DNA of 64,000 nt from Laetmonice hystrix (taxonomy: Eukaryota): NCBI GenBank assembly GCA_965235115.1, contig OZ249439.1, positions 2,480,001 through 2,544,000 on the forward strand, read 5' to 3'. The notes under the pieces were generated by a model. The model made no database searches, was not told where the DNA came from, and worked only from the letters and a program-made list of their open reading frames with translations. Both the position numbers and the translations under genes were made by a program. Shown here one piece after another: positions 3,501-50,611 of the stretch (the stretch's first letter is position 1; every line of letters starts with the position of its first letter).

Positions 3501-5037
3501 TGATCTCTGGTTTCGAGTTTCACGATCCACGATTGTGAAAATCCCCTCTGATAGTTTTACCTTGTAATATATATTTGATATCTAAGTGACCCTGGATTAT
3601 CTGACACAAAGGTCATTTCCCAGCCTACCCTAATATGTATGTCACTTGTATGTAACACCCAGTCTGATTGGTTGAGAGATGATAGCGTTGATTGATGACA
3701 TATCGTCGGACGGCTGTTTTTGATCTTTACCCTCAAGGCGTTCTGATTGAGTCTGAAAACTCCTTCAGGCCTGAAAGTGAAGTTAAGTAGGCCTAAGTAG
3801 GTCCATAATGATGTCAAGTCATTGGGCAAGACCAGTGAGTTATTTCCCATGCATTTATTTCTTCAAGCCTACTTTGAAATAGACGGGAGTTTTGTTTGAG
3901 AGGAGAGAACAAGGACAAGAGAGTGGAGTTGAAGAGTTGGTCCAGCTCTGGCCCGCCGGGCCGCTGGTCCGTCGGTCGGCCTGGCTCACCCAGCTGGTGT
4001 GGCGACCGCCCGGCCGGCGTGCTTGACTAACCATGCGTGACTTTAGTTTAGGGCCCTGTACCTGATGAGTGCCGTGAGGGGGTAGGGGGCCAGGCGGTGA
4101 GGGGATTTAAAATTGAAGCCATCTGACCGGAGGTTGTGCTAGCAGCAGGCACCCGCGCAGAAGGCACCCCCCCCCCTCACCGTCAGTCGTGGCACTCATT
4201 ACCTCCAAGTTTTCAGGCAGGCCGATATTTTAATGACATGTTCTGTACGGTTTACCATACGGACCCACACTGGTGCCATGGATAGCAGACAGTAGCCCAT
4301 AATGTACACACTACTGGATACCGTGACCTGAAACTGGGGAGGATTTTGTTTTCACAACAAGGCAGTGGGCAGGCAGACAGCAAAGTCAAGACGAGACTTC
4401 AAGTATATAAAACACAGTTGTATGGAATAGTCGCAGTTTTTAAAATCAGAATGGGCCCGTAATTCTGATGCCCCGCCTATCTGTACCCTTCCCCGAGAAA
4501 TGTAGAAGGAATGCCAGGCTTGGAGGAGTTCTGGGGGGAGGGGGTACGGAGGGGGGTACGCGGGGTAGGCCTGCACATGGTTTTCTACCCCCTGTGTACC
4601 ACCCCATGATTCCTGATCCATCACCCCTCCACGTCCACCAGGGGGAGCCAGGGGTCCCAGTCGAGTGCACAAAGACAGACGTCCAGACTCCCGTTCGTCC
4701 GATGATTTTCTCTCCCCCCCCCCTCTCCCGACCCCCAACATCACGGCCCTCGGCCCCCGACCCTCGGCCCCCGGCCCCTGGCCCTACCCGGGCGAAGGGC
4801 GAGGATCTCCGGGGCCCGGGCTGTCCACCGATCACGGAGAAACCCTGATAAACGGCTGTGGTGTGGGGAGGTTGATTAGGGTGGGCAACCTAATACTGTC
4901 CCGGTGGGTTGGCTACCTTGGTGTAGATTTATATTCGGACAACTGGCACGATGAAAATCTTCAACCGGGCCTCAAGTGAGAGTACATTCAGAGGTTCTGA
5001 TCTACACAACATGGGGAACTCGTTTAGAGGTCGCTTG

Positions 5038-5730
5038 ATGTTCCTGGTGAGGGTTTGATATCTCGGTAAACGGGGAATGTTCCTGGTGAGGGTTTGATAT
5101 CTCGGTAAACGGGGAATGTTCCTGGTGAGGGTTTGATATCTCGGTAAACGGGGAATGTTCCTGGTGAGGGTTTGATATCTCGGTAAACGCGGAATGTTCC
5201 TGGTGAGGGTTTGATATCTCGGTAAACGGGGAATGTTCCTGGTGAGGGTTTGATATCTCGGTAAACGGGGAATGTTCCTCGTGAGGGTTTGATATCTCGG
5301 TAAACGGGGAATGTTCCTGGTGAGGGTTTGATATCTCGGTAAACGGGGAATGTTCCTGGTGAGGGTTTGATATCTCGGTAAACGGGGAATGTTCCTGGTG
5401 AGGGTTTGATATCACGGTAAACGGGGAATGTTCCTGGTGAGGGTTTGATATCTCGGTAAACGGGGAATATTCCTGGTGAGGGTTTGATATCTCGGTAAAC
5501 GGGGAATGTTCCTGGTGAGGGTTTGATATCACGGTAAACGGGGAATGTTCCTGGTGAGGGTTTGATATCTCGGTAAACGGGGAATGTTCCTGGTGAGGGT
5601 TTGATATCTCGGTAAACGGGGAATGTTCCTGGTGAGGGTTTGATATCTCGGTAAACGGGGAATGTTCCTGGTGAGGGTTTGATATCTCGGTAAACGGGGA
5701 ATGTTCCTGGTGAGGGTTTGATATCACGGT
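5038..5730. repeat. 39-bp minisatellite x~18
   Basis: atgttcctggtgagggtttgatatctcggtaaacgggga; starts at 5038 and 5701 differ by 17x39. Confidence 0.97.
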
Positions 5731-7117
5731 CGACGTGAAATGTCATCTGGCCAGGTGGGCAGACGGGGGGGGGGGGGTGACCTGGCGTGGATTACGTCGA
5801 GATAATCCCCCGGATTCCAGGGGAACCACAGGTGTTAATCTTACCCCCATAATCTCTGGACGTGAGTTCCCTCCCGACATGCTGCGTGTATTTGGAGGTA
5901 TAAGACAGAGGTAGAGCTAGGCGGGCTCCTTTGAAAACACGAGACCAAAGGAGGCGGGTTATTCCTGGCCATACATCGGCAGATACCGACTACCTGTGTG
6001 ACACATGACTGTCGAGTTGAACCATCGTTGGTTGCACACACAAGGACCTGTATAACACATGCCTGTCGAGTTGAACACACAAGGCTGGCGTCGTCTTCCG
6101 TGCGATAATCTATAGGGGCACTAATCCCCTTAGAAGTTAATCAGGGTTTTATATAGGGCAGTGGGGTGAAATGAAAACGTTTGCCAAAGTCAAAGATATA
6201 AGACTTTAAATACTGGATTCGTTTTCTAACAGAAGTAGAGAATGATAGAACGTAGAACTACGACATGTTTTTGATATATTTTTTGTGTTCGTGTTTTTTG
6301 TTTGGGGAGAATTGACTGGCCTGTCTGCCAGCTGGATGCTGATATTTGAAAAAACAGCAAAGACAGTATGGCACAGCCGACATGGAAGACAGCCTACTCA
6401 CATTCTAACCTAATTTTTCACAAGTGATGTGCTGATAGACTATGCGTGCGTCCATTTCATAGCTTACAATAATATTTCAGTTACTGTTACATTTCTTTGG
6501 GATCATGTGAAAAATATTAACCGCAAAAGTTTTCAGGAAAATAAAATGGTATATATGTGTTTCTTTAGCCCATGGGACTCTGATGTTATAAAGTGATGTT
6601 ATATAAACCCATTTATATATAAATTTATATACCCATTTATATAAATCTTTCTGATTGAAAACACACATGGATTATACCTGGAGGTGTCTGTGATCAGAAT
6701 GTAGATAAAGCGAAACCTTGCAGGGGTTTCTCCCCAATCCCCCCCTCTCCAGGCAGGGTGAGCACATTGCGGGAGGTTATGGATGCATTTATCCTTCATT
6801 TAGCCGGAGGCTGGGGGGAATCAGAGTGAGAGCCCTGAGGGTAACTGACAACCACAATACTTATCTACCCCACATACCTCCCTCCAGCTCTACACAACCC
6901 TCACCCCCAAATACCCCACTACACCCCACAGGAAACCCTCATGACAACTCTGGTCAAGTCGTCGTTCACATGTCACTGTCTGTCAGTGAGGTAAAAAGTG
7001 GTTTTATACCGCCGCGGTCATATGCTGGGAGGATCAGCTGCCAGTATAAATTCCTCTATTTCATTGTGGACAATCCAGATAGATTAGAGAAACAGCTGAC
7101 TTTATTTACGGGTCATG

Positions 7118-7370
7118 ATGATCTACAGACTCCCTGCCCCCTGGGAACATGGTCTACAGACTCCTTGCCCCCTGGGAGCATGATCTACAGACTCCCTGCC
7201 CCTAGGAACATGATCTACAGACTCCCTGCCCCCTGGGAACATGATCTACAGACTCCCTGTCCCCTGGGAACATGGTCTACAGACTCCCTGCCCCCTGGGA
7301 ACATGGTCTACAGACTCCCTGCCCCCTGGGAACATGGTCTACAGACTCCCTGCCCATGGAGTCTACAGAC
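7118..7370. repeat. 31-bp minisatellite x~8
   Basis: atgatctacagactccctgccccctgggaac. Confidence 0.95.
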
Positions 7371-7425
7371 GTTCCAACAGGTGACAGGCTCGAATGGTCA
7401 TCGATTCTCTATTGAGGCTGACAAG

Positions 7426-7584
7426 GAATTTGGTGCACCTTGCCTGTTTGTGGATATCTGGAAGGTATTTGACAGCTGAATTTGGTACACCATGCCTGTT
7501 TGTGGATATCTGGAAGGTATTTGACAGCTGAATTTGGTGCACCATGCCTGTTTGTGGATATCTGGAAGGTATTTGACAGCTGAA
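7426..7584. repeat. 52-bp tandem repeat x3
   Basis: gaatttggtgcacc...gtatttgacagct. Confidence 0.95.
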
Positions 7585-8132
7585 CCGTGGGCAGGAAGAA
7601 CAGGTGTCAGATATGTGTTTCATTAGATCATAATTCAATCACAAAATATAAATCAGTTTTCAATGAAACATCTTTGATTAACGATGCATGGTATCTTGAA
7701 TAGTTCCTCCCGTTTTTGGCGGTATGGCGGAGGGTGGGGGTTGGGGTGTGTGGCTGGGGGCCCATGGCGAGCCGTCAGTCACATTGGGATTACAGGAGCC
7801 AGGTATTGAAGTATCCAAAGATGTAGATCGATGTCATTTACCTCGGAGCTGTTTCTAACCTATTTCAGACCGATGTAGAAGCCCAAGCTGTCAGCAGCCA
7901 TCCTGTGCCGCTCAGACTAACTGCTCTAATTGTCCCAGAGGCTGTGGCACGGTGTCTGGTGCCAATCTGATAAGTTCACATTCACAGTAGGAGATCTCTA
8001 ATTCAACAATCCGGGAAGATTAGAGGTGACAGTTTTAATGATGTGATAATTGATGGCCTAGCATGGATTGGTGGCAGTCAGATCGGTGGCGGAGTTCGGG
8101 GTCAGTCTGAAAGCAGATGGTCCCTCCTTCCT

Positions 8133-8310
8133 TTATCTCGATGTGTTTGGTGGACCTTGGTTAGGTTCTGTCGTCTAACCATAAAGTGTGATCCGATCTT
8201 TGCTAAACTTAATCCTGGATAACATAAATTATCTCGATGTGTTTGGTGGACCTTGGTTAGGTTCTGTCGTCTAACCATAAAGTGTGATCCGATCTTAATC
8301 CTGGATAACA
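8133..8310. repeat. about 96-bp direct duplication x2
   Basis: ttatctcgatgtgtttggtggacc at 8133 and 8229. Confidence 0.9.
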
Positions 8311-10676
8311 CAAATATTCTTGTGACAGTTTCTGATTGGAGGAGCACCAAGGGATGAACTGTTATGTAAGGCGTGTCGGGATTGGCCGTTTTATTCCCAC
8401 CATTAGTTCTGTTTGCAGCCTCCAGGGGGTATCTTTCTCCGCCATTAAATGATGCGGGCAATTGTAGAAACTTGTACCCCACTTGTACCCCACCAGTCAC
8501 CCCGCTGGGAATCCGTAGATTTCACCCCATTTTTAGGACCCTCCAGGTTCCACCCTAATTATTGCCGCAGTGGTTAATTGCTACCGAAGCTGATGGGCAG
8601 TAATGAAGTTAATTAGTTAATTAGTAACTGTAAGGGGGGTCGGGCAGGGGTTGTACTCCCCTGGGCCCTTCCTTGTTTAATGAGGGCGTTTAGTAAGGTG
8701 TATATATATACGTAAATCGTTAACTGAGCTGTGGATTGTCCATGTACTGGCGGGGAGAGGGCGAGGCACCAGAAGTCTCATCTTGGAAGGTTTTACAGAC
8801 AGCTGAGCTGGAATGAACCATTCCGGGAGAGTTCGACGTTTAGGTAATCAAGTATATGTACACAGGGTTCTGGTGTTACTCGATATCGTCAGGTTAGATT
8901 TGAGTGTCCCTCAGATACAGTGTTTTTACAGATTGTAGTTTAATATAGGACCAGAACGAGATAGATTGCGAGTTGCCAGTCTCCGCCAGCGGTCCACGCC
9001 TGGACAAAGGTGGAAGAGTTCTTGGGTTGGCTCCAACTGATGCTCCCGCCTACATGGCACATCAAAGCCTAGTAATGACACATAATGACACCTCCCTCCT
9101 GTCCCAGGTGAAAGAAGAAATCCTCCCCGCCTCTCCCCCACAGGTGGGTGATGGCACATCAAAGGGCACGGTGCGGTGTTTACCTGCCGTTTCTAGGTGA
9201 GCCGAGTCAGCAAACGTCCAGAAGTGATCATTGTCACGGGTAATGTAGCCGGATTGTCTGGTGGAGACATCTGGTGGTCATTGGCATTGATTATCGGAGC
9301 ATCAGGGGCGGCAGTTGGTGTCTGTTTAACTTGACAACCATGTTTGATTCCAAGGTTTGCACTCAAACAAGGTCACACTCAGGGCTTGGACTCACTCTAC
9401 CATTGAGGCGATGTTGAACTTTGAAACCATTGGAAAATGTCATCAAGGGAAATATCATCGTTATTTGAGAATCAAATCTCGGAGTTCAATTTAACTTCTT
9501 ACATGTAGATTTTGTAGCCTTCTTGGTTGCCTGCCAAAAGTTAGATATTTCTTGCAGAACGAACTCTGGGGTTTAATTGTACTGAATTTGACAGTGGTTA
9601 AGGTTTTTTTTCATTGCAGTTGTTTTTATCTGGCATATTTAATTCTTAATGAAAGTTTCGGTGAACAAATGAGCAGAAGGTTTACCAGTGTTTGAGACAA
9701 TGGGTGTGATTGGTTGGGAGGGAGGGTGTCGGTGATTGGAGGACGCATTAGGCAGTCGTCTAATGACTCTACCCTGGGGTGTCTGCCTTCGGGAGGCAAG
9801 GTTTGTTCTGTACGGCATGTGGTTAAGGAGGTAACCTCCAAAAAAACTATTCTAAATCATTGAGCAAAAAACTGGCAGCACTGATACTATGAAAGAATTA
9901 TCATCATGTACAAAAGAAATTTAAATGTAAAATTTTGGAAGAAGAGATGGCTGGAGGGTGTATGGTTGATTAGGCCGTGACCGCTTCCAGCCACAGTCAG
10001 CGAGCATAGAGCACCTCGACCACCGGCACAGGCGACGCCCGCCCCCGGCCAGCAGGGACCTCCCGCAAAAAAAAAAAAAAAAAAGGGAGCAAGGCACAAG
10101 TGTGCATTGTGTAATTCTGGCCGCCCCTGGCGACCGCAGGAGTTTAGGGGTTAGCAGGAACGCCAGCGTCTAAAGGAAGTTCGGTTAGATCAGTCCAGAT
10201 GGCATATTTTGACAGATGTTTTTCCGTGTTTGAAATAGTTGTTCATGCTGAGACATTGAAGATTCATGATTGAATGGATAGTGGATATTAAGTCATTAGA
10301 ATAAAAAGTGGGGGGAAAGCTGGAGATGAGAGTGGGGTGGCTATAGAGGGTTATAGAGTCATTTACCAAGTACATGTATTCATCTCGTGTACTCGAATCG
10401 TTTTCCAACAGTTACAGTAGCAGCAATCAGAAGGACATTCAGAGACAGAAAATGTCGTGTGATTTTACACAAGACGTGCCAAGGAATGTATGAGGATCGT
10501 AAACGATAAGATATATAAACATGGTGTGAAGGTGAGCAGGTTGGGCTGTTTCTGTGTCCTTGAAGGATAGAACAATTGGTGATATGATGAGTGCCGTGTA
10601 CTGTGAGTGTCCTGATGTCCGATGACAAGCGGTTTTTGAAGAAATCCGACGAGCAGACCTCAGGATCTGACGGCAG

Positions 10677-11182
10677 TTATCTCTTTATGTACGGGGCTGG
10701 TCCTGTGACAGACTTTGATTATCTCTTTATGTACGGGGCTGGTCCTGTGACAGACTTTGATTATCTCTTTATGTACGGGGCAGGTCCTGTGACAGACTTT
10801 GATTATCTCTTTATGTACGGGGCAGGTCCTGTGACAGACTTTGATTATCTCTTTATGTACGGGGCAGGTCCTGTGACAGACTTTGATTATCTCTTTATGT
10901 ACGGGGCAGGTCCTGTGACAGACTTTGATTATCTCTTTATGTACGGGGCTGGTCCTGTGACAGACTTTGATTATCTCTTTATGTACGGGGCAGGTCCTGT
11001 GACAGACTTTGATTATCTCTTTATGTACGGGGCAGGTCCTGTGACAGACTTTGATTATCTCTTTATGTACGGGGCAGGTCCTGTGACAGACTTTGATTAT
11101 CTCTTTATGTACGGGGCAGGTCCTGTGACAGACTTTGATTATCTCTTTATGTACGGGGCAGGTCCTGTGACAGACTTTGATT
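10677..11182. repeat. 42-bp minisatellite x12
   Basis: ttatctctttatgtacggggcaggtcctgtgacagactttga. Confidence 0.97.
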
Positions 11183-13035
11183 TATGTAGTCACCATGGCA
11201 GGTCATATGATGATATATGATGTGTCATAATGTGGTCCCAGATATGAGGTCATTCACCATATTTGAGGCCCGCGATAAGAGGTCCTTCAGTAGAGTTTAG
11301 GGTGAGATAAGAGGTCCTTCAACCTAGTTGTGATGAAGTTTGAGAGTTGACTGACATCAATAGGCCGACCCTCTGTCATATCAACCTACAGTAGGAATGG
11401 TCGTCAGGCCCTAGGCCTATTAATTATTGCTTGAGTGTTGGTAGCCATGACTGGAAGGGGGCTTATTTCTTCTATTATCAGGATAAAAATTAATTATTTT
11501 TTTTTGCGAACCTAAAACACATTGATACGTTAGTGAGATTGTTTGGAACTGTGGTAAATTCCAGGAAGTTGTTACGGGAGTGGGGGGGGGGGGGTAAGCA
11601 GGGACCATGTCAGCACATTCCAACCCCCTACCCTCTCTCCCCCTCCAAACCCCTTCACCCCTACTCTCCCTCCCCCCCACACACACACCCTGCGGTATCT
11701 GAGCTCGCAGTCGGCCTGTCGTTTGTGTTGAGAGTCTGCCCACCATCCATCCATCGTGAACGCGCCGTTGTCACGTCATGACGTCACGCGACCCTTGACC
11801 CCGCGCGGTGAGCCGATCTCCAGGCTGATCAAGGAAAGCTTACCTTATCTTCGCTCTACCTATTCTCCCAGCTGATGGATGGCTTGGCAGTCTGTGATAT
11901 GATCGCCACCAGACCCTCACCACCAACAGTCAGCTAGCCCTCTCAACTTACCCACACCTTTCTTCGCATTCACATTCTCAAAGGACCAGAGAAAAAGACG
12001 TCCGGGGGAAGTCATAATGAATGATTTCATTGCTGCAGCAGAGGGGTTTAAACCTCATTCATGGTTCTGTAATCGGAATTCCTATTCACAGTGGTGTGAC
12101 AGTATTTCAAAGTGAACATAGAATCTTATCACCTTTTCACTTTCGTCGCAGTTTGGGCCACATTTTGAATTTAGTTTAATTGTCTGTGCGTTTGCTCAAG
12201 TTGATCCAACTGATGTTCCGATAGGCGCAAATATCTCAGATTTTTACTGCCTACAAATACCGGGTATGGAGTGAACCACTGGGGGTTTAGGGAACAACAC
12301 ACCAAATATGTTAGCCTCCGTCTGAGACGGTTGACACGCCTGGTGACACGCCCACCCTGGTGTTAGGCTGTCACTAATATAAGATCAGAGAAACCCTTAA
12401 CGTTCAGGAGATCAACCCCCACGTTATTACAGATCCTTTCCTCTCCAAGGTCACCCTCGATAGAATATTTCCTCCCCAAGGTCACCCTCTATAGAATAAC
12501 TGATAAACGTACGACAGGAAACAAAGACTACACGACCACTCCTTCTATTGTTACGGCACTCCTCGCTACAGATAATTTAACCTCGGGTAATAAATCGGGA
12601 TGTTGAGACATGTTGAGTTTCTGTGTATTGTGTGTGTGAAAAGCTCCTTATCTGGATAATTTGGTAAGATTCGTCTGTGTTGTAACCATAGAGGTTACAC
12701 AGTTACAGTCATTATACTGAACGTACCGAGTTGATTGCAACCACCACCGTCTTTACATTTGATGATCACAGGAACGAAGGCCGACCTCTGACCCCTGACC
12801 TTTGACCCGGTCGTCCTCGCAGGTGTCACCAACTGGCCGCCACTCGTGGCGAGTGTCGGTCACATACCCCTCCTCTCCTCCACCCCAATCATCTCACACC
12901 CTCTCATTACACACCTCTTTAGGTGTGATGATCACCCCCCACCCCAGCCTGTTTACCCCACCCCTCACGGTCTCACCTCACCCTTGACCTCCCACCCTGC
13001 CCACCCCACATGTCTGATCACCTGTCCACGAGTAC

Positions 13036-13138
13036 CTCTAACCATTGTGTTATTTTTTGTATGTTCCAGGTAAGCTATGTCACATCCTTGGGTTCACTGA
13101 CATGAGATGATCATGTAAGCTAGAGCTGGGTGGTAAGT
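13036..13138 (+). promoter_or_regulatory. candidate recursive splice site (ratchet point) with 63-nt cryptic RS-exon
   Basis: CTCTAAC branch (13036-42), AG-free T-rich tract, CAG|GTAAGC at 13069/13070, downstream GTG|GTAAGT at 13132/13133. Confidence 0.55.
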
Positions 13139-13196
13139 ATAAAGTTTACAACCCTGTATTATTAATTATTTAGATTATCATGAATGTTGAATAGAT

Positions 13197-13384
13197 GAGT
13201 TATGCCACCTATACCCAGTGGTGTAGGTGTCAGTCGGTACTGGGGGTCGGTGGGTGTCAGAGTTATGCCACCTATACCCAGTGGTGTAGGTGTCAGTCGG
13301 TAGTGGGGGTCGGTGGGTGTCAGAGCTATGCCACCTATACCCAGTGGTGTAGGTGTCAGTCGGTACTGGGGGTCGGTGGGTGTC
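13197..13384. repeat. 63-bp tandem repeat x3
   Basis: gagttatgccacctatacccagtggtgtagg... Confidence 0.95.
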
Positions 13385-14165
13385 TAAACCTGTCAGATCA
13401 GATCGAAATTCCACGATGTCCTGGGTTGTTATCAGATATTTGATCTGTCATCTCAGCCACACGTCACAAGGAGTTAACAAATGCCATGATTTATTCACCC
13501 ACACGTCACAAGGAGTTAACAAATGCCAGGATTTATTCACGAGTTTTCTCCTCGTGGATGACAAGAAGTTCAAGGATGAAATGTTAAAATCTCCAGCGTC
13601 AGGACAAGTGTACGGACAGCAAGGCCGTGGTTTCGTCAACCGTGGACAGCGTGAAGTCTTATCTCAGTGTGCCGTTTACATGTTGAGAGGGGAAATAATA
13701 CAACCCCACTTGGAAGGGGGTGATGAGGGTTGGGGTATTACGGGATCCTTAGCGGGATGATGAGACAGGGATGTCAGATAAAACACATTCAGGGGATGAG
13801 ATGAGATCGACCAGATAGACTCTGACCCGGCGGGCGGGGGTACATGGGTGGGGTGGGGTGGGGGGGAGGAGATACTTCAGGACGCCTCCTCAGTGTAACC
13901 TGACACCGCTAACTCCGATACGCCAGCAAACAGATGCATGACATCACAGATGGCAAGAGAAGTATGACGAGATAAGAATTCCTGACCCATCACTCTTTCC
14001 TTGTGAACCGCGCCTGGCGTCCAAACGTCTCCGACCAGACGATCTGTCACGTCACGTGGGGAGATCTCGATCAATCTGTGCTGTTGTTCACTGAGATTTA
14101 CTCTCACTGTTAGTGGTCAGGTTCATGAACGTCAGGACGTTTGGTCAGGACGATCCGTAATCCGT

Positions 14166-15093
14166 GATCTGATTGGTTGCAGGAGGTCACATGGTGGGAT
14201 CTCATTGGTTGAGGAGGACATACATGGTGGGATCTCATTGGTTGAGGAGGTCACATGGTGGGATCTGATTGGTTGCAGGAGGTCACATGGTGGGATCTCA
14301 TTGGTTGAGGAGGACACACATGGTGGGATCTCATTGGTTGAGGAGGACACACATGGTGGGATCTCATTGGTTGAGGAGGTCACATGGTGGGATCTCATTG
14401 GTTGAGGAGGACACATGGTGGGATCTCATTGGTTGAGGAGGACATACATGGTGGGATCTGATTGGTTGCAGGAGGTCACATGGTGGGATCTCATTGGTTG
14501 AGGAGGACACACATGGTGGGATCTCATTGGTTGAGGAGGTCACATGGTGGGATCTCATTGGTTGAGGAGGACACATGGTGGGATCTCATTGGTTGAGGAG
14601 GACATACATGGTGGGATCTGATTGGTTGCAGGAGGTCACATGGTGGGATCTCATTGGTTGAGGAGGACACACATGGTGGGATCTCATTGGTTGAGGAGGA
14701 CACACATGGTGGGATCTCATTGGTTGAGGAGGTCACATGGTGGGATCTCATTGGTTGAGGAGGTCACATGGTGGGATCTGATTGGTTGCAGGAGGTCACA
14801 TGGTGGGATCTCATTGGTTGAGGAGGACACACATGGTGGGATCTCATTGGTTGAGGAGGACACACATGGTGGGATCTCATTGGTTGAGGAGGACACACAT
14901 GGTGGGATCTCATTGGTTGAGGAGGTCACATGGTGGGATCTCATTGGTTGAGGAGGACACATGGTGGGATCTCATTGGTTGAGGAGGACATACATGGTGG
15001 GATCTCATTGGTTGCAGGAGGTCACATGGTGGGATCTCATTGGTTGCAGGAGGTCACATGGTGGGATCTCATTGGTTGAGGAGGACATACATG
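14166..15093. repeat. 31-33-bp minisatellite x~29 (ATTGG and CACATG in every unit)
   Basis: cacatggtgggatctcattggttgaggagg(t/ac). Confidence 0.97.
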
Positions 15094-15749
15094 TAGATTA
15101 GGTAGATGTTGGAGACATTGTTTTCACACTGGGTACGTGTCCATACCCAAACTTACCGGAGAATAAATACAGTTGGTTTCTGAATTTATAGGCACTTAAA
15201 TAGCAAATTCTGCTAATGTTCAAGCGTTTAAAACAGCGATCTTTAAATTGAATTGCATGAATGCTCGGTCACCGAGGATTCAGGAATCCTACTGGATTGG
15301 GGGCGGTGTCAAACTGGAGGCCGAGAAAGTAGATTTGCTGGTTGATGATGACCGAGGTGCCCCTAGTTGCTACAAGTAAGTACCCCTGTATCCTCACTGT
15401 GGACCTCAGTCCAGTACCCCAACCAGTACCAGGAGAGGGGGCGCTGTACCCTGACCCCCACCCACTGAGTCGGCTCTTTATGACCAGATTTTATTGTCGT
15501 ACTGCTGAAAGATAAGGCCCCATTTCAGGTCTCTGCTTTCGAGGAAGATTTGTGCATATTTCTTTGATTTTCAGGTGTCCAAATCGAAAACGTCCTTGAA
15601 ACAGAAGTGACCTTCATTTATATTTTATGCAAAGCTACTTTTCAAAGACTTTGTTTTCTTTGACGATGATGTCATGTAAATGGAAAGTGTTTACTGTCAT
15701 ATTGCCTAGTTTTCTGACATGAATGATGTTCAAAGACCTTTCCCAGTTG

Positions 15750-15763
15750 GTCGCCATGGCAAC
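15750..15763. promoter_or_regulatory. RFX X-box-like palindrome GTCGCCATGGCAAC
   Basis: 13/14 match to GTTGCCATGGCAAC; motif only. Confidence 0.3.
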
Positions 15764-16140
15764 ACCCCATCAACACGTGACGTTATCAGTTTATGTGAGC
15801 TCACCATTGCCCAGTTCTATCGATGAATCATCACGTGGCCGGCACAGCCACCCTCACCCACCGGGGGTAAAAAAGATGTCCTATTATCACCCCTATTTCT
15901 GTATTACCCTGCTGACAGCCTGTTGACAGGGTACCAGGTCGAGTATTAGATGTCAAAGTCGGTGACTGAAACCGACTATAAACTGACTGTTAGAAAGCCA
16001 GCCCCTTGAGGGCTATCGGCAGGGAACCGTCCACCTAACATAATCCATGGTACTTCACACACAAAACACCGTCTAGGGACGCTATGGGTTGTTCCTTTTG
16101 TCCCCGATTTGTAAATAGAAAGCAGTTCACATAATCTTGG

Positions 16141-16759
16141 TCAGATTTGAGGAACATATATCTCAGTCTGTGTACTTTATCTCCAGAGTTTTCAGATTTG
16201 AGGGATAGATATCTCAGTCTGTGTACTTTATCTCCAGAGTTTTCAGATTTGAGGGATAGATATCTCAGTCTGTGTACTTTATCTCCAGAGTTTTCAGATT
16301 TGAGGGATAGATATCTAAGTCTGTGTACTTTATCTCCAAGGTTTTCCGATTTGAGGGATAGATATCTAAGTCTGTGTACTTTATCTCCAGAGTTGTCAAA
16401 TTTGAGGGATAGATATCTCAGTCTGTGTACTTTATCTCCAGAGTTGTCAGATTTGAGGAACAGCTATCTCAGTCTGTGTACTTTACCTCCAAGGTTTTCC
16501 GATTTGAGGGATAGATATCTCAGTCTGTGTACTTTATCTCCAAGGCTTTCAGATTTGAGGGATAGATATCTCAGTCTGTGTACTTTATCTCCAGAGTTTT
16601 CAGATTTGAGGGATAGATATCTAAGTCTGTGTACTTTATCTCCAAGGTTTTCAGATTTGAGGGATAGATATCTCAGTCTGTGTACGTTATCTCCAGAGTT
16701 TTCAGATTTGAGAGATGGATATCTCAGTCTGTGTACTTATATCTCCAGAGTTTTCAGAT
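16141..16759. repeat. 51-bp minisatellite x12
   Basis: tcagatttgagggatagatatctcagtctgtgtactttatctccagagttt. Confidence 0.97.
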
Positions 16760-18284
16760 GTGTGAGTTTAGGTAAGTGTGTAGGTTCCGAAGTCATCCGT
16801 TACAATGTGGTAAATGTTTGTAAGATCTAAGTTTATTATAGATGTAGGAAAGTCATTTTCCTCTGGAGTAAAAGTTTGAATCATTGGCCATGGTCATGTT
16901 CTGACCACAGAATTCTAGTGAAACCATCTAAGTGTAAAAACCCAAACTACCTACTTGTGAGTGATATCTTTACAATCAGTGTTTGACCAGACGTACCGAG
17001 GTAGGTCTGACTGTTGATAGACGTTGATTCTGTGGTGTTGAGGAGTTCATTCTGTGGTGTTGAGAAGTTCATTCTGTGGTGTTGAGGAGTTCAAGTCTCG
17101 TTTTGTCAACCCGACCATTGTTTACAGGAAGGATTTCTGTCACTCAGATACCTTTCTCTACCTCCTCCATGGAGAGTTCCACATACCAAACGCCCGGTTC
17201 TCCAGTACTGGTCTCAACAAAGTAAATTGACACAAGTTGTGAAGCGCTTCCTGCTTGGCTTGTTGACACAGTCGGATTTGACCATTTGGAGGCGGTTATT
17301 TAATTAAAAGGGCACTGTGTAGGGTAGACGAAAGTACCCGTGTACCTTGAACTAGTGGAAGGTGTAGGAGTTTATGGTGGTGTGATGTAATACATGTAAT
17401 AACTGTACTTGGGTGGAGACCTGCCCTCTACTGCTGCCCTCTACCGCGGCCAACAGAGGGCGCAGGTCTCCAGCCAATACCATACCACGGTCCCAGCCAG
17501 CCACTGATTACAACATGGCCTCCGCCGTCTGAGGACAATGCTACCATTGTCTGTTGTGCGGATCAGTGGGGGTGACCACTTCAAGTGGTCAGTCAGTATT
17601 GGCTAGTGTGGCTCCCACCAATCCCACCTGCCACGCTGTGGTCAATGTGCCTTACCTGCACGCTGGTCTCCATTCATTCCGAAGACCCTGTTATACTGTG
17701 TTTGGTGATTGAGCACTGAATATATAATGTTATGATCGGTCATACCAGCCAGGTGACAAGGTTGGCCATGGGATTTGTTATTAATCACAGCAGTCCGGCT
17801 GATGTAATAACCACAAACACTCAAATCTCCGGGGTCAGAGACCAACAACTTGTTCAGCATCAATCACCTTGTGAACCGCGGGGTCAATCAGTTTAAACTT
17901 TGACATGTGAAGCCATGATTTTTTCAAGAATCTGGACAATGTGTTGGTCGGTGTGTATTTACTGAACGTCGAAAGCCATGAATTATAAATTTCAGACTCT
18001 ATTCACGACTTGATTAAGGCAGAAGTCATTGAGACCTTTGTAAGATAAGATTTTGTCGTAGTTGTAATTTCCCAGGGAATGACAATAGCCCTTTGTGTAG
18101 TCAGTGACCCGAACATGTTAGGTAGCATGTGATGTAGCATGCCGCCCACGATACCGGCAGTTTGAGACGTGACACTGGTAATGAAAACATCATGAAAACT
18201 TCAGTTATTTGTTGAGAGTTGTAGCGTTATTGTCGGCATTGTAATTAATGTCTTGTGGACTCAATACTCAATGAGTCCACTGAA

Positions 18285-18732
18285 AACTTTCTCCCCCTCC
18301 GAGACCCACAGACCGTGGTGGCTCTAACTTTCTCCCCCTCCGAGACCCACAGACCGTGGTGGCTCTAACTTTCTCCCCCTCCGGGACCCACAAACCCTGG
18401 TGGCTCTAACTTTCTCCCCCTCCGGGACCCACAGACCGTGGTGGCTCTAACTTTCTCCCTCCGGGACCCACAGACCGTGGTGGCTCTAACTTTCTCCCCC
18501 TCCGGGACCCACAGACCGTGGTGGCTCTAACTTTCTCCCCCTCCGAGACCCACAGACCGTGGTGGCTCTAACTTTCTCCCCCTCCGGGACCCACAGACCG
18601 TGGTGGCTCTAACTTTCTCCACCTCCGAGACCCACAGACCGTGGTGGCTCTAACTTTCTCCACCTCCGAGACCCACAGACCGTGGTGGCTCTAACTTTCT
18701 CCCCCTCCGGGACCCACAGACCGTGGTGGCTC
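18285..18732. repeat. 41-bp minisatellite x11
   Basis: aactttctccccctccgggacccacagaccgtggtggctct. Confidence 0.97.
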
Positions 18733-19806
18733 GAACACAAACAGTCCATGTAGTTCTCAGGAAACAATGAGGGCAGAGTGAGGACAGTCCACACACAATC
18801 TCTGAATGTTCCAACACGTGATTCTACACAAGTTAGCGTGTAATGTTAGCCACATCACAGTGCACCATGCAGAGATAGTCCCCCTGGGAACTTTCAAAGG
18901 TAGTTTTCTCAAACTTGGGTTGAGAAGACCTACAAATATTGGCGTTGGAGACATATTACTGGGCGTTTCCGGAGATAAATATGTGTGGATGGAAAGTACG
19001 AGTAAAAACTTGAAGTAGTTGTTGCGTGTGTGTGTATAATATGTGGTGGGGAGAAGAAAGTTGTTATTCTGTAGGAGCCTGTTCCGCTCCAGATCTGTTG
19101 GTAATCACAGGTAGATGTCAGGGGGGTGGTAGACCAGAGGTCAGAATGTTTTGTGGCCCGGCCTCCAGAGGTATATTTTAATGAAGGTCTAATTGAATAG
19201 AGTGAAGGAGAAATGACTAATTGCTCAAGTTGACAGTCGATCAGATAGCTACCGTACCATCAGGTTTGACTTCCGACCATCGCTCAGAACTGTCTGGTAA
19301 CATTTAACCTTCCAAATGTTTGCCGCATGTGTGAGTCTCTGTCATACTATATGTAATTCACAACCGCTGGGCTCGACGTACGTACGTTAATGATGTAATC
19401 CCCTTGTGTCAGGCTAATATCACGACCAGGTCGACATTCCCGCTATATAACCCGGGTTTTCATGAGTTAAGATTAACAGACAGCAGGCCGTGAAGGACAA
19501 TGTTTGATGGGAAGATTCTGGTGTCTGTGACGGTAAGTGAGAATATAGAGGCAGGTGTGTGTTCGATCTGTCAGTGATACGGAGAGAAGGTCGGTAGAGA
19601 AACCAAGGGACCGATTACATCCATACATTACCATGGAATGTCAGACATGAATACCATGTTGTTACCTGAACACGTGTCTTGATGAGTAAATGGTTGAAGA
19701 ATTCGTTGTGCCCAAGTTGTTACCGTAGGTAGCAGCAGGTTAATTGTCTGATTTATGTGATCACTGGGTAACTATTAGATGAGCCAGCGTCGGTTACACG
19801 TCATGT

Positions 19807-19820
19807 CCAGCAGAGGGCGC
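19807..19820 (+). promoter_or_regulatory. consensus CTCF core motif CCAGCAGAGGGCGC
   Basis: 14/14 match to CCRSYAGRKGGCRS; motif only. Confidence 0.4.
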
Positions 19821-20220
19821 GACGATCGGGACGCTGTAAGCCTCCAGTTCATAAAGTATTCAATGATTGTGTCATCAACAGTCGTAACATCTAGCCATAT
19901 ACTCGCAGTAATTGATTACGCCTAGCGAAGTAATTGATTGCGGAAGTAATTTCTTCATTAACAGCTTTAAATCTAAAACTTTAGTGGTAAAACTAGGGAC
20001 AGCGAGTGGCGGCAGTAGACAGAATTCACATCTAACCATTGCAGCCGATAAATGGCACTTCAAGTTCTTTAAAAAAAAGATATATAGCGACTAAAGGGAC
20101 ATCAGGTAGCGATTGTTTTTTCCATGGTTTTTGTATTTTTTGCTGTAAAACCTTTCCGACCCGCTGCTAGACACACCTCTGATGCTGATCATTTTCTGAC
20201 CACCAGCAGGATACCTATAC

Positions 20221-20368
20221 TGTCCCCAGCGGGACGATTCTTTTGTCCCCAGCGGGACACCTCTGCTGTCCCCAGCAGGACACTTCTGATGTCCCCAGCG
20301 GGACACTTCTGATGTCCCCAGCGGGACACTTCTGTTTCCCCCAGCGGGACACTTCTGGCTGGGGACAG
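20221..20368. repeat. about 23-bp hairpin-unit array x6 plus one inverted terminal copy
   Basis: TGTCCC-CAGC-GGGACA units; GCTGGGGACA at 20358-20367. Confidence 0.85.
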
Positions 20369-21485
20369 CTCTGCTACTGATCGCTCCTCCAACTGGTCGT
20401 TTCTAGAGCACCCGCCAGGGGGTATAATCAGAGCGAGGCTGCCGCCTCATTATGACCTACAGTACATTGTCATGTTGTAGATACACCCATTCTGATCAGA
20501 ACTTCGTGTGTCCGGGTCAAATTACTTTACACTAGGAGGGTGACATCCAGATGAAGCGTTGATAAGAGACTCAGAGATGGGATTTAGATCAGGGGGTGCA
20601 ATACAACGTAAAACTCTTTAGGAGCTTCATTCTCATCAACATTGTGTACTCATGTCAACGAAAGTCTGTAAAATTACTCAACCCGTTATAAAAACGGTGA
20701 CAGTCGGAATAAACGGTGTCCAAGCCCTGTTGGGATCACATTTAAGGACAAGTTGAATCGGGGCTCACGGGGTAAAAACTGACCGTTTCCAGGCCCGCTG
20801 TAATTCACGTGGCCGTACAGCACTTATGATGACAAAAACATTAAGGGCAGAAATGTTTGGAATGACATGGCTGAGTGAGTTTGATTGACAGGCCTGAGTG
20901 GGTTAGTCTGTGTTGGTCTGAGAGGGGCGGGGAGTGAGAGGGGTGACGAGCAGGCAGACAAAAACCTTACTGTCAACTTTGGGTCACAAGTCGACCTACC
21001 AAACCCACTTTGGCTTGACAAACTTTAACACAGCAACAGGTCTGACCGTAGGCAGGAGGTGATACTGTAGGTATAGAGACTACAGGAGCTGAGCCCTCCC
21101 TCCCCCCACAAAGGTAAAAGATAAAGACACACAAAAAAAACACAAAAGGCCAGGCTATTGGTGTTATCAAATTGGATCAAGTGTACGAAACGTGAATGGT
21201 TATTGCTTATATTGTCGGTATATTGAAGAGAAGAGTTCCTCTTTGAACACCAGTATCAGTAACAAACCTCTTTTTATCGAAGGCAACTTTATTTCTAACA
21301 CTACAATGTCGTTAGGGATCTTTGGCTTTCACAGCAGTGTCCCATGTTTCGACAGTGTCCCATGTGTATTTTACAGTGGTCACAAACTTGTGTACTCGTA
21401 TCTTTACAGTGGGATCGTGATTATATTAATTGCCAGCTCTGTTTACGTCCTTTTGGGAGGATAGATACCCACACCAGTTTATCCA

Positions 21486-21831
21486 GGCCAGTCAGCCAAA
21501 GGCCAGTCAGCCAAAGGCCAGTCAGTCAAAGGCCAGTTAGCCAAAGGCCAGTCAGCCAAAGGCCCGTTAGCCAAAGGCTAGTCAGCCAAAGGCCAGTCAG
21601 CCAAAGGCCAGTCAGCCAAAGGCCCGTTAGCCAAAGGCTAGTCAGCCAAAGGCCAGTCAGCCAAAGGCCAGTCAGCCAAAGGCCAGTCAGCCAAAGGCCA
21701 GTTAGCCAAAGGCCAGTCAGTCAAAGGCCAGTCGGCCAAAGGCCAGTCAGTCAAAGGCCAGTCAGCCAAAGGCCAGTCAGTCAAAGACCAGTCAGCCAAA
21801 GGCCAGTCAGCCAAAGGCCAGTCAGTCAAAG
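21486..21831. repeat. 15-bp minisatellite x23
   Basis: ggccagtcagccaaa. Confidence 0.97.
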
Positions 21832-22384
21832 CCACAGACATCGTACTAATCTAAAACTAAGCTCACGTTTTGGTAGGAGCCAATAAAACTGTTCAGTGGG
21901 TGATTATCGGTCCCAGTGAATGTAGCCAGGAGGATACAGATAAACACCTCACTGGAAACCTCACGTGTCGCACGTTTTCGGGTCAGGTGCTGTTTTTGGG
22001 TCAGCTTCCTATATAAATGTAAACCGCAAACGTTTTACATGTAAATTAACCCGAGACGGGTCAGTGGGGACATTGAACTCCACCTTTGTGTGAAGGTGTT
22101 TAAAATCACACTTTTGTTCACTTAAATATTTAGTTCCAGTGGCGTATGAAGCGAAACCTTGGCAGTAAAACCCAAACCAAGCGTTAGAACAGACTGATCG
22201 TGAGGGATATTTTGTGGATCACTGTGTTGTTAAGCGAGTAGAACGTAATTGAGCAAGATGAGAATGAAGTCATTGGGGCGGAGAGTGAGAATCGTTCTGG
22301 AACAAGAGGACATGACACGACATGGCTGGGAATGGGTTTAGGGGTATATCGGGTCCACAGAGGTGGCCCGAGCCGAGGCCAGCT

Positions 22385-22535
22385 CCGCCAGCCGTCCGGA
22401 CGGGCCGGTGGACCGGACGGGCCGGTGGGCCGGACGGGGACCGGCGGGGCAGACACGGCGGCCGGCGGGGCAGACACGGCGGCCGGTGGGGCAGGCACGG
22501 CGGCCGGTGGGGCATTTAAGGCGGCCGGCGGGGCC
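22385..22535. repeat. GC-rich low-complexity patch with 21-bp repeats
   Basis: ggcggccggcggggcagacac x3-4; palindrome CCGTCCGGACGG at 22392-22403. Confidence 0.75.
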
Positions 22536-23289
22536 CCCTGCCTGCCGTTTCGGTCAGCTCCCCTGGGATCCCGACGTGTCAGCACTACACTCCAGCTGTG
22601 TATCACCAAACCGAACCTCACAAAGTTACTTTCTCCTCAGGTTTCCACTGATGCCGCTAATTGGAATCAATCCAGACAGCCTGCCCCGTCACCAGGGACA
22701 CAAAACCTGGGCGGAGTTGGCCGGTTGATCTGGAGAACCGAATACCAGCGGTGGAGGCGGTGGGTCGGGTTCCAGCTCCGATAGACGGAGTTGATGAGGT
22801 GGTGTAGTGGTGTGATGAATGTGACTAGGTCCTGCTATGGTTCACATCCCATAGACTCTCTGTCGGTCTGGTGGGCCGGGGGGGGGGCACCTGAACCCTA
22901 CCGATAACCGGTCAAATGTTGACTGGAGGGTTTCTTATCAAAATAACCTTTTCCTTGGCAGGCAGGAAGGCAAGGGTTCGGTTGAAGCCGAACATACAAT
23001 TTGTCTTCACTCAGCAGTCGTCGGGTTGAGTTTATTGTTGTTGACTCAGCCCAGTAACATTTGAAACAAGTCGGCCACCGACATGAACCAAATGTGGAAC
23101 TTCACAAACCATTATCACAAATCGGTTCAAACTCACCCTGGATGTTCTTGGCATTCTCTGACGTTTGGCAAAATAAACTCCTTAAATACTGCACACATTT
23201 ATCCTCCCCAATATTTATATTTAGCCCTCCAAGTGCCTGTTGAAATCAGTGTCCAGGTTGTTTTAATGGAAACCCAGTCCAAGTTTTGA

Positions 23290-23876
23290 AGCCGATATGT
23301 AGATTGTATGAGAGGTTGGTGTAGCTTTGTTTTTAAGTACTTAGGTAAGTTAGCTAAGTGTTTAAGCCGATGGTACCAAGGGATATGTAGATTGTATGAG
23401 AGGTTGGCGTAGGTATGTTTTTAGGTACTTAGGTAAGTTAGCTAAGTGTTACGCCGAGGGTACCAAGGGATATGTAGATTGTATGAGAGGTTGGCGTAGG
23501 TATGTTTTTAGGTACTTAGGTAAGTTAGCTAAGTGTTACGCCGAGGGTACCAAGGGATATGTAGATTGTATGAGAGGTTGGCGTAGGTATGTTTTTAGGT
23601 ACTTAGGTAAGTTAGCTAAGTGTTTAAGCCGAGGGTACCAAGGGATATGTAGATTGTATGAGAGGTTGGTTTGTTTTTAGGTACTTAGGTAAGTTAGCTA
23701 AGTGTTACGCCGAGGGTACCAAGGGATATGTAGATTGTATGAGAGGTTGGTGTAGGTATGTTTTTAGGTACTTAGGTAAGTTAGCTAAGTGTTTAAGCCG
23801 AGGGTACCAAGGGATATGTAGATTGTATGAGAGGTTAGTGTAGGTATGTTTTTAGGTACTTAGGTAAGTTAGCTAC
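23290..23876. repeat. 87-bp minisatellite x~7 rich in AG|GT splice-donor motifs
   Basis: ...gtaggtatgtttttaggtacttaggtaagttagctaag... Confidence 0.97.
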
Positions 23877-24062
23877 CTATATTAAGGTCTTTATTGGAGT
23901 AATATTCAGATAAAGATCGCACCAGTACAAGTCATCTAGGTTCATAAAGTGCAGAATATCAAAGGTTGCTCAGTTAATTAGGACTTGGCCCTTAGGAAGA
24001 ACACTTGGCATATTTCCCATCTGACATCAACTCAGACTGCCATCTCAGCCATATATATTTAA

Positions 24063-24533
24063 TGTTTGTACCAGGTCCAAGTTCTAGTAATGTTTGTACC
24101 AGGTCTGGGAGTTATACCGACAGGTCCAAGTTCTAGTAATGTTTGTACCAGGTCTGGGAGTTATACCGACAGGTCCAAGTTCTAGTAATGTTTGTACCAG
24201 GTCTGGGAGTTATACCGACATGTCCAAGTTCTAGCAATGTTTGTACCAGGTCTGGGAGATATACCGACAGGCCCAAGTTCTAGTAATGTTTGTACCAGGT
24301 CTGGGAGTTATACCGACAGGCCCAAGTTCTAGTAATGTTTGTACCAGGTCTGGGAGATACCGACAGGCCCAAGTTCTAGTAATGTTTGTACCAGGTCTGG
24401 GAGTTATACCGACAGGTCCAAGTTCTAGTAATGTTTGTACCAGGTCTGGGAGATACCGACAGGCCCAAGTTCTAGTAATGTTTGTACCAGGTCTGGGAGA
24501 TATACCGACAGGTCCAAGTTCTAGTAATGTTTT
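24063..24533. repeat. 49-bp minisatellite x~9 (47-bp variants)
   Basis: tgtttgtaccaggtctgggagttataccgacaggtccaagttctagtaa. Confidence 0.96.
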
Positions 24534-47345: not shown

Positions 47346-47388
47346 TCTGAACCTCTCTACGCACCACTCAAGACTCGAATCCTCACAT

Positions 47389-50587: not shown

Positions 50588-50611
50588 GTAGGTTGGAAGT
50601 ATTACTATAAC

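What the first reader, a model, noticed from the sequence alone, without database searches (positions are those of the whole stretch)
13036..13138. Well-formed recursive-splicing ratchet point with a stop-containing RS-exon inside the giant dachsous intron
Seen: CTCTAAC branch consensus 28 nt upstream, a T-rich tract with no AG, then CAG immediately followed by GTAAGC (13069/13070), so splicing here regenerates a donor. A second donor, GTG|GTAAGT, lies 63 nt downstream (13133), with a weaker cat|GTAAGC at 13115. The intron is phase 0, and the cryptic exon reads VSYVTSLGSLT-stop (TGA 13103-05). Established: this architecture (3'ss/5'ss fusion, short cryptic exon, often with a premature stop) defines recursive splicing of very long introns in Drosophila and vertebrates. 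Inference: ds pre-mRNA here may be spliced stepwise. I am not aware of this being documented for this gene in such an invertebrate lineage, but cannot check. It was the best such site I saw by eye in 50 kb.
Basis: partly seen in the sequence, partly recalled or inferred. Interest (0 to 1): 0.8.

Follow-up and report, generated by a model that had tools for sequence, protein, structure and literature searches.

The report
Probable recursive splice site, dachsous intron
Deep inside a 110-kb intron of this invertebrate's dachsous gene lies a textbook "intron end fused to intron start" site with a short stop-containing cryptic exon. It is one of four such sense-strand sites, so the intron is probably removed in steps as in flies, but no RNA data exist to prove it.

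Summary

The site lies inside the dachsous intron, but that intron is about 110 kb, not 50 kb. Exon 1 sits 59-61 kb upstream of the window and ends AAG|GTAAGC. Splicing to 13070 would therefore rebuild the native donor exactly.

The bare acceptor-donor motif is no rarer than chance, with about two per 110 kb on either strand. The full architecture, with a strong donor 25-100 nt downstream, is strand-specific. It occurs 7 times on the sense strand against once on the antisense strand, over 198 kb of the intron in three species. Markov simulations expect about 0.1.

A sister site 56 kb upstream keeps its position and splice signals, but not its interior, in a relative whose intron is about 95% unalignable.

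For 13070 itself the ortholog could not be reached and no RNA runs exist. One haplotype lacks the CTCTAAC motif.

Verdict: probably a real recursive splice site (about 0.55) and a new member of a known kind. Other agents of this scan noted the same architecture in other long introns of this genome.

The parts
13037..13043 (+). CTCTAAC branch-point-like motif, with its A 27 nt upstream of the AG. It is present on the reference haplotype only.
   Evidence: sequence. In one search a loose end at 13044 in all three DNA contig sets shows the other haplotype has unrelated sequence upstream of 13044.
13044..13069 (+). Acceptor half of the ratchet point: CATTGTGTTATTTTTTGTATGTTCCAG. It has no AG and has TT at -5/-6. 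Its approximate PWM score of 7.1 lies within the range of this gene's real acceptors (0.9-12.4, median about 6.7).
   Evidence: Both haplotypes are identical over this stretch.
13070..13075 (+). Donor half, GTAAGC. After ligation to exon 1 (...AAG) it rebuilds AAG|GTAAGC, identical at -3..+6 to the native donor of the giant intron.
   Evidence: score 10.7 for both.
13070..13132 (+). Candidate cryptic RS-exon of 63 nt. In phase 0 it reads VSYVTSLGSLT*, with TGA at 13103-05. A shorter 45-nt version ends at 13114.
13115..13120 (+). Alternative RS-exon donor cat|GTAAGC (score 7.9). The heterozygous SNP 13114 T>G makes it CAG|GTAAGC (11.2) on the other haplotype.
13133..13138 (+). RS-exon donor GTG|GTAAGT (score 9.1). 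It is weaker than the regenerated donor (10.7).
9144..9202 (+). Neighbouring weaker ratchet-like element: CCCCCACAG|GTGGGT with a 53-nt cryptic exon ending at TAG|GTGAGC (9197).
50386..50590 (+). ds exon 2, the true 3' end of the giant intron. Its acceptor is TTTTGTTTTCCAG|GTGTCG.
1..50385 (+). The in-window part of the 109.8-kb ds intron 1. Exon 1 is at window -61213..-59459 (G000:C4:2418787-2420541). Sister ratchet-like sites lie at window -43285 and -26872.

Best explanation
13069/13070 is most likely a recursive splice site (ratchet point) of the fly or vertebrate "RS-exon" type in the 110-kb first coding intron of dachsous.

Proposed mechanism (inferred, not shown):
1. During transcription the acceptor at 13069 and a donor 45 or 63 nt downstream are recognised together as a short cryptic exon.
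2. Exon 1 is spliced to 13070, which removes the first 72.5 kb.
3. This recreates AAG|GTAAGC, the same donor as the native one. It outcompetes the weaker cryptic-exon donor and is spliced to exon 2, 37.3 kb downstream.
4. The stop-containing cryptic exon therefore never reaches the mRNA.

Three further sense-strand sites share this build: window -43285, -26872 and 9144. They suggest the intron is removed in up to five steps.
For: Shown directly:
- All motif elements are in place.
- The site lies in the phase-0 ds intron between exon 1 (window -61213..-59459) and exon 2 (50386). The collinear alignment to a 3328-aa dachsous homolog (P0050) leaves no residues between exon 1 and exon 2 unaccounted for.
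- The regenerated donor equals the native donor.
- TT at -5/-6 and a branch A at -27 match the fly ratchet-point features in Duff et al..
- The ratchet-point donor is stronger than the RS-exon donor, and the cryptic exon is short and carries a stop, as described in PMC8605326.

Statistics:
- A downstream donor scoring 9.1 or more occurs at 3.6% of random sense positions.
- The PWM scan covered 198 kb of ds giant-intron sequence from three species. It found 8 ratchet-like sites on the sense strand and 2 on the antisense strand.
- 7 of those sense sites and 1 antisense site also have a downstream donor. No site of either kind occurs in 58 kb of flanks.
- Markov order-1 and order-3 simulations of the sense strands expect about 1 ratchet-like site and about 0.1 with a donor. 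None of 100 simulations reached the observed counts.
- 8 of 83 strong sense acceptors are followed by a donor, against 2 of 134 on the antisense strand.

Conservation of a sister site:
- The site at window -43285 has a positional ortholog in relative 1, 0.85-1.0 kb after a shared conserved element.
- The two share a CTRAC branch motif, TTTTGTATTTTRCAG|GTAKGT and AG|GTAAGG. Their interiors are unrelated and of different length (68 vs 62 nt).
- That ortholog is the best match among 130 candidate sites: 22 of 34 positions, against a mean of 10.3 (sd 2.8).

Context from the literature: in flies most introns over 40 kb carry such sites (PMC6110457).
Against: - No RNA evidence of any kind. The only public runs are three DNA contig sets from one sample.
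- Conservation of 13070 itself is untested. Its ortholog in relative 1 would lie about 103 kb into that intron, beyond what could be fetched.
- The last 49 kb of relative 2's intron has no alignable counterpart.
- The simple motif YAG|GTRAG with a pyrimidine tract is as common antisense as sense (5 vs 4). The strand bias therefore rests on the downstream donor and on PWM thresholds that I chose. The PWMs are approximations from memory.
- The CTCTAAC branch motif lies on only one haplotype.
- SNP 13114 T>G gives the other haplotype a cryptic-exon donor (11.2) at least as strong as the regenerated one (10.7).
- The site sits between a polymorphic C-rich block and a 63-nt x3 minisatellite, which is a fast-changing neighbourhood.
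Confidence: 0.55

Rival explanations
1. Chance juxtaposition. This would be a non-functional AG|GT that happens to follow a T-rich tract and precede two GTAAG motifs in a repeat-rich, G+T-skewed intron. The spliceosome ignores it.
For: - Basic ratchet-like motifs occur about 2 per 110 kb on both strands.
- The upstream flank is structurally polymorphic, and the cryptic-exon donor varies between haplotypes.
- No counterpart was found in relative 2.
- The empirical control rate (1 full-architecture site in 314 kb of antisense plus flanks) still allows about 0.35 false sites per 110 kb.
Against: - Four full-architecture sites lie on the sense strand of this intron and none on the antisense strand.
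- The Markov expectation is about 0.04 per 110 kb.
- The regenerated donor is identical to the native donor.
- A sister site is conserved in a relative.
Confidence: 0.25
2. A cryptic, poison or decoy cassette exon. The spliceosome recognises 13070-13132 (or -13114), but the exon is either included at low level, giving a stop and nonsense-mediated decay, or acts as a decoy. It does not serve stepwise intron removal.
For: - The signals match a short exon with good splice sites and an in-frame stop.
- On the alternative haplotype the +45 donor becomes a perfect CAG|GTAAGC, which would favour inclusion.
- PMC8605326 notes that RS-exons can be expressed.
Against: - An ordinary cassette exon has no reason to begin with GTAAGC.
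- 7 of 17 sense-strand exon-like elements in these introns begin with a strong donor, far above chance. That points to selection for the regenerated donor.
Confidence: 0.15
3. An exon of another, unannotated sense-strand transcript nested in the intron, such as a non-coding RNA.
For: There is no positive evidence for this. It cannot be excluded without RNA data. The intron does hold conserved non-coding elements.
Against: - No ORF in 1-13 kb or at 13353-13760 matches a protein family.
- The region is single-copy.
- The architecture is shared with other sites spaced along the same intron.
Confidence: 0.05

Closest known systems
Drosophila intronic ratchet points with cryptic RS-exons (Ubx, kuz, Bx, luna; Duff et al. 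bioRxiv 10.1101/006163; Joseph et al., PMC8605326; Pai et al., PMC6110457)
   Same: - Pyrimidine tract, TT at -5/-6 and CAG|GTAAG.
- Branch A near -27.
- Lies in an intron over 40 kb of a developmental or morphogenesis gene.
- Short cryptic exon (63 or 45 nt) with a downstream donor weaker than the regenerated one.
- The cryptic exon would break the reading frame.
- Several sites per intron. The first two segments here are 16.2 and 16.4 kb, against a fly median of 16.4 kb.
- At the sister site the splice signals are conserved and the interior is not.
   Different: - The organism is not an insect.
- No junction, saw-tooth or lariat evidence.
- Conservation is shown only for a sister site, not for 13070.
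- The upstream branch region is polymorphic.
- Two sister sites use GTATGT rather than GTAAGT.
Vertebrate recursive splicing through RS-exons in long neuronal genes (Sibley et al. 2015, as cited in PMC8605326 and PMC6224609)
   Same: - The exon-definition logic applies.
- The RS-exon carries a premature stop.
- The reconstituted 5' splice site competes with the RS-exon donor.
   Different: - Vertebrate sites were defined from RNA data.
- They are few and often sit in first introns over 150 kb.
- Here the claim rests on sequence architecture only.
Pseudoexons and decoy exons in long introns (e.g. DMD pseudoexons, PMC7175933; decoy exons, PMC7373989)
   Same: A short intronic unit with acceptor and donor signals and a stop codon.
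   Different: Pseudoexons do not generally start with a consensus donor. The AG|GTAAGC fusion, identical to the native donor, is the distinguishing feature here.

Membership tests
Recursive splice site (ratchet point) with RS-exon | [quoted passage not shown] | tested here: met
   TTATTTTTTGTATGTTCCAG|GTAAGC lies 72.5 kb into a 109.8-kb intron. The acceptor score of 7.1 is within the range of this gene's real acceptors.
Recursive splice site (ratchet point) with RS-exon | Ligation to the upstream exon regenerates a strong 5' splice site | tested here: met
   Exon 1 ends AAG. This gives AAG|GTAAGC, identical at -3..+6 to the native donor.
Recursive splice site (ratchet point) with RS-exon | A downstream donor defines a short (about 50 nt) cryptic RS-exon | tested here: met
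   Donors lie at +45 (GTAAGC) and +63 (GTG|GTAAGT, score 9.1). A donor this strong occurs at 3.6% of random positions.
Recursive splice site (ratchet point) with RS-exon | The ratchet-point donor is stronger than the RS-exon donor | tested here: inconclusive
   On the reference haplotype the scores are 10.7 against 9.1 and 7.9. On the other haplotype 13114 T>G gives CAG|GTAAGC, scoring 11.2. The scores come from an approximate PWM.
Recursive splice site (ratchet point) with RS-exon | The cryptic exon would disrupt the ORF if included | tested here: met
   In-frame TGA at 13103-05.
Recursive splice site (ratchet point) with RS-exon | Evolutionary conservation of the acceptor|donor core with a poorly conserved interior | tested here: inconclusive
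- Relative 2 has no alignable counterpart.
- For the sister site at window -43285 the feature is met.
Recursive splice site (ratchet point) with RS-exon | RNA intermediates: exon-to-ratchet-point junction reads, saw-tooth read density, lariats to and from the site | not testable with these tools
   No RNA run holds this gene. Only three DNA contig sets from one sample exist.
Fly-type ratchet point (Duff et al.) | TT at -5/-6 (99.5% of fly sites) and a branch point at -21 to -36 | tested here: met
   TTCCAG has T at -6 and -5. The branch A at 13042 is at -27 on the reference haplotype. On the other haplotype the CTCTAAC motif is absent.

The most novel reading that the evidence does not exclude
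Recursive splicing through cryptic RS-exons may be a conserved, routine way of removing giant introns of developmental genes in this non-insect invertebrate clade. Ratchet points would be held in place across species whose introns are otherwise unalignable. That would make the mechanism ancestral to bilaterians, or repeatedly evolved, rather than a peculiarity of flies and vertebrates. Dachsous would be removed in up to five steps, 13070 being the last.
Probability: 0.4. Interest if true: 0.65.

Novelty: new member of a known kind. Interest (0 to 1): 0.5.

Why it matters
Recursive splicing has been shown by experiment essentially only in Drosophila and vertebrates. A sense-strand series of ratchet points in the 110-kb dachsous intron, one of them conserved between species, would extend the mechanism to another invertebrate lineage. 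It would also show that such sites can be predicted from architecture alone: acceptor|donor fusion plus a downstream donor, checked against the antisense strand.

In practice, these cryptic stop-containing exons are places where a single point mutation could knock out a planar-polarity gene. Gene predictors must also avoid calling them as exons.

Tried and rejected
- **RNA evidence.** The look-up of sequencing runs gave only three DNA contig sets from one sample. Read laying could therefore show haplotypes only, not splicing.
- **Background sampling.** Controls are limited to the antisense strand, 58 kb of flanks and simulations.
- **Walk along relative 1.** I walked contig_315 from exon 1. 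The intron there is about 1.4 times longer, so the ortholog of 13070 lies about 103 kb in. It was out of reach. The contig that holds relative 1's exon 2 reaches only about 10 kb of the giant intron upstream of it.
- **Walk along relative 2.** I walked 49 kb upstream of exon 2. No alignable islands were found.
- **Three ratchet-like sites in relative 2.** They lie 40.3, 22.5 and 7.4 kb upstream of exon 2. One matches 13070 at 19 of 21 positions. I rejected this as evidence of orthology because the match is confined to consensus positions and is not collinear.
- **Genome-wide pattern test.** Ratchet point followed by donor gave 5 non-repeat hits. Donor followed by ratchet point gave 0. These numbers are too small to use.
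- **Repeat or transposon origin.** Rejected: the 601-bp region is single-copy.
- **Nested coding gene.** ORFs in the intron have no family matches.
- **Fly dachsous.** The Pai et al. supplements returned no match for the gene names and identifiers searched, dachsous and known recursive genes (kuz, Ubx) alike. I could not determine whether fly ds is recursively spliced.

Full report
**1. The observation**

- CTCTAAC at 13037-13043.
- A T-rich stretch with no AG (CATTGTGTTATTTTTTGTATGTTCC).
- CAG|GTAAGC with its junction at 13069/13070.
- cat|GTAAGC with its GT at 13115.
- GTG|GTAAGT with its GT at 13133.

Translation of 13070-13132 gives VSYVTSLGSLT*DDHVS*SWV. The 63-nt unit therefore carries an in-frame TGA at 13103-05. 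The 601 bp around the site are single-copy in the 627-Mb assembly.

**2. Where the site lies**

The window is G000:C4:2480001-2544000. Cadherin-coding exons on the + strand begin only at 50386. That exon starts in the middle of a cadherin domain, directly after TTTTGTTTTCCAG.

A library search with the 723-residue exon (757-aa ORF) returned full-length relatives. One of them, P0050 (3328 aa), carries the dachsous-type cytoplasmic tail. It aligns collinearly as follows:
- Residues 14-589 align to window -61213..-59459, at 54% identity.
- Residues 578-641 align to 50392-50583.
- The alignment continues to the stop near 64273.

Named database relatives of exon 1 are "protein dachsous". Exon 1 ends ...GQCILK with AAG|GTAAGCCC.

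It is 109.8 kb long, not about 50 kb. The site lies 72.5 kb from the intron's 5' end and 37.3 kb from its 3' end. Splicing exon 1 to 13070 would recreate AAG|GTAAGC, identical at -3..+6 to the native donor.

**3. Is it more than chance?**

The bare motif is not.
- YAG|GTAAG occurs 12 times on the + strand of the window. Seven of these lie in an 87-nt minisatellite at 23.3-23.9 kb, and two are real exon borders.
- With stricter requirements (YAG|GTRAG, at least 70% pyrimidines, no AG), the ds intron has 2 sense and 2 antisense sites. The 198 kb of ds giant-intron sequence gathered from three species has 5 sense and 4 antisense.

The downstream donor is what separates the strands.
- I scored donors with an approximate metazoan 5' splice-site matrix written from memory. 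The tests below are internal, comparing each strand against its own background.
- A donor as good as GTG|GTAAGT within +25..+100 occurs at 3.6% of random sense-strand positions.
- Four of the five strict sense sites have such a donor, with p = 0.02-0.06 each.
- None of the four antisense sites does, with p = 0.41-0.77.

A matrix-based definition gives the same picture. It requires acceptor score at least 6, regenerated donor (AAG plus 6 nt) at least 7, and no AG.
- Ratchet-like sites: 8 sense, 2 antisense.
- With a downstream donor of at least 7.5: 7 sense, 1 antisense.
- None occurs in 58 kb of flanking DNA on either strand.
- Markov order-1 and order-3 simulations of the sense strands expect about 1 ratchet-like site and about 0.1 with a donor. 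None of 100 runs reached the observed counts.
- Strong acceptor-like sites are actually commoner on the antisense strand (134 vs 83). Yet 8 of 83 sense acceptors are followed directly by a good donor, against 2 of 134 antisense.
- Seven of the 17 sense "exon-like" units begin with a donor.

In this genome the sense sites are listed below by the first base after the AG, in window coordinates.

| Site | Junction | Downstream donor |
|---|---|---|
| -43285 | GCAG\|GTATGT | +68 |
| -26872 | TTCAG\|GTATGT | +51 |
| 9144 | CACAG\|GTGGGT | +53 |
| 13070 | CCAG\|GTAAGC | +63 |

The first two intron segments would be 16.2 and 16.4 kb. Fly recursive segments have a median of 16.4 kb. I treat this match as suggestive only.

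**4. Related species**

Two unnamed relatives sit in ENA assemblies.
- Relative 1 (ERZ26168297): exon 1 is 86% identical at the protein level.
- Relative 2 (ERZ25767047): exon 1 is 70% identical.

By walking from called ORF to called ORF I fetched:
- the first 23.4 kb and last 5.7 kb of relative 1's giant intron;
- the first 10 kb and last 49 kb of relative 2's, which is about 94 kb long.

Relative 1's intron is about 95% unalignable to ours. It carries small collinear conserved islands that look like enhancers, with TAATTA and CACCTG motifs. It is about 1.4 times longer than ours.

The site at -43285 has a positional ortholog in relative 1. It lies 0.85-1.0 kb after the last shared island. 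The two share:
- a CTAAC/CTGAC branch motif;
- TTTTGTATTTTRCAG|GTAKGT;
- AG|GTAAGG.

The interior is unrelated, and the lengths differ (68 vs 62 nt). Among 130 other AG|GT sites with a pyrimidine tract, this ortholog is by far the best match: 22 of 34 positions, against a mean of 10.3 (sd 2.8) and a next best of 16. Conserved splice signals with a drifting, frame-breaking interior is exactly how PMC8605326 describes fly cryptic RS-exons.

Relative 2's intron shares no alignable islands with ours. It nonetheless has three strong sense-strand ratchet-like sites, 40.3, 22.5 and 7.4 kb upstream of exon 2. Each has a donor 33-49 nt downstream. Exon 1 ends in AAG in all three species.

**5. What could not be shown for 13070 itself**

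- Its ortholog in relative 1 would lie about 103 kb into that intron, near the end of contig_315.
- Relative 2 has a site with 19 of 21 identical bases (TTTTGTCTTTTCCAG|GTAAGC). The identity is confined to consensus positions and the location is not collinear. I do not count it as orthology, and one search finds no outstanding match for 13070.
- No RNA runs exist.

The three DNA contig sets from one individual show that both haplotypes are identical from 13044 to 13101. Two differences matter:
- One haplotype has unrelated sequence upstream of 13044. It is absent from the window. The CTCTAAC motif is therefore not shared by both haplotypes. A weaker TTCAT branch candidate would remain on that haplotype.
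- SNP 13114 T>G converts cat|GTAAGC into a consensus CAG|GTAAGC on the other haplotype.

A 63-nt x3 tandem repeat starts 65 nt downstream of the cryptic exon. The neighbourhood is thus fast-evolving. The 58-bp SNP-free core is not in itself significant, because heterozygosity is about 1 SNP per 86 bp.

**6. Interpretation**

The sequence-level definition of a ratchet point with an RS-exon is met in full. These signals point to selection on the architecture in this gene:
- strand specificity of the full architecture;
- recurrence in three species;
- identity of the regenerated and native donors;
- conservation of a sister site.

The literature makes recursion the expected state for fly introns over 40 kb in morphogenesis genes (PMC6110457).

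Using antisense plus flanks as the empirical false-positive rate (1 per 314 kb), about 0.35 chance sites would be expected on the sense strand of this intron. Four are observed. Markov models give about 0.04.

- genuine recursive splice site: 0.55;
- chance motif: 0.25;
- spliceosome-recognised poison or decoy exon without a ratchet role: 0.15;
- something else: 0.05.

**7. Novelty**

Recursive splicing is well known. I found no paper linking it to dachsous, and the library search returned no paper pairing it with annelid, mollusc or lophotrochozoan terms. Other agents of this scan noted same-strand ratchet series in the ephrin, Eph, srGAP, RBMS and TCF introns of this genome. Those notes are unverified. 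I used them as context only, and I did not test their guess that the animal is an annelid.

This finding is a new member of a known kind. What it adds is a cross-species, position-conserved ratchet point in the same intron.

Noticed in passing
G000:C4:2436625-2436814 (window -43375..-43186; L005:6625-6814) and L016:19419-19602: A second ratchet-like site, TTTTGTTGTATTTTGCAG|GTATGT with donor AAG|GTAAGG at +68. It is conserved in position and splice signals in relative 1, while the interior is unrelated. This is the best-supported recursive site of the ds intron.
   Followed up: yes
window 13014-13043 (alternative haplotype) and 13114: A heterozygous structural difference has its breakpoint at 13044 and removes the CTCTAAC motif on one haplotype. 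SNP 13114 T>G creates a consensus CAG|GTAAGC donor inside the cryptic exon.
   Followed up: partly
window 13197-13385: A 63-nt tandem repeat in three copies (97-100% identical), G/T-rich, starting 65 nt after the cryptic exon.
   Followed up: no
window 23342-23870: An ~87-nt minisatellite. Each of its seven copies carries TTAG|GTAAGTTAG, which inflates naive counts of ratchet motifs.
   Followed up: partly
window -10980..-10600 (outside the window, C4 about 2469020-2469400): A 21-nt minisatellite of CCTCCACAG|GTGGGCCT units, again repeated acceptor|donor-like junctions on the sense strand.
   Followed up: no
window -59011..-44086 (outside the window) and rel1 L014/L016: About ten collinear conserved non-coding islands (45-370 bp, 69-86% identity) lie in the first 15 kb of the ds intron. 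Several hold TAATTA and CACCTG motifs and are probably enhancers.
   Followed up: partly
rel2 (ERZ25767047 ctg38084), 40.3, 22.5 and 7.4 kb upstream of ds exon 2: Three strong sense-strand ratchet-like sites, each with a donor 33-49 nt downstream, spaced 17.7 and 15.2 kb apart. Recursive splicing of ds may hold in that species too.
   Followed up: partly
window 5002-5746 and 10591-11220: Long ORFs on both strands that are merely tandem repeats (27- and 39-nt-type units). They have no protein-family match.
   Followed up: no
window 52374-52385 and 55400-55410: Two real exon borders happen to read CAG|GTAAG: the acceptor of the exon at 52377 and the donor of the 757-aa ORF exon at 55402/55403. 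The motif alone does not mark a ratchet point.
   Followed up: yes
L019:3825-7937 (relative 2, upstream of ds exon 1): An intact-looking 1370-aa retrotransposon polyprotein ORF (RVT_1, RNase H, integrase) lies 2 kb upstream of ds exon 1 in relative 2.
   Followed up: no
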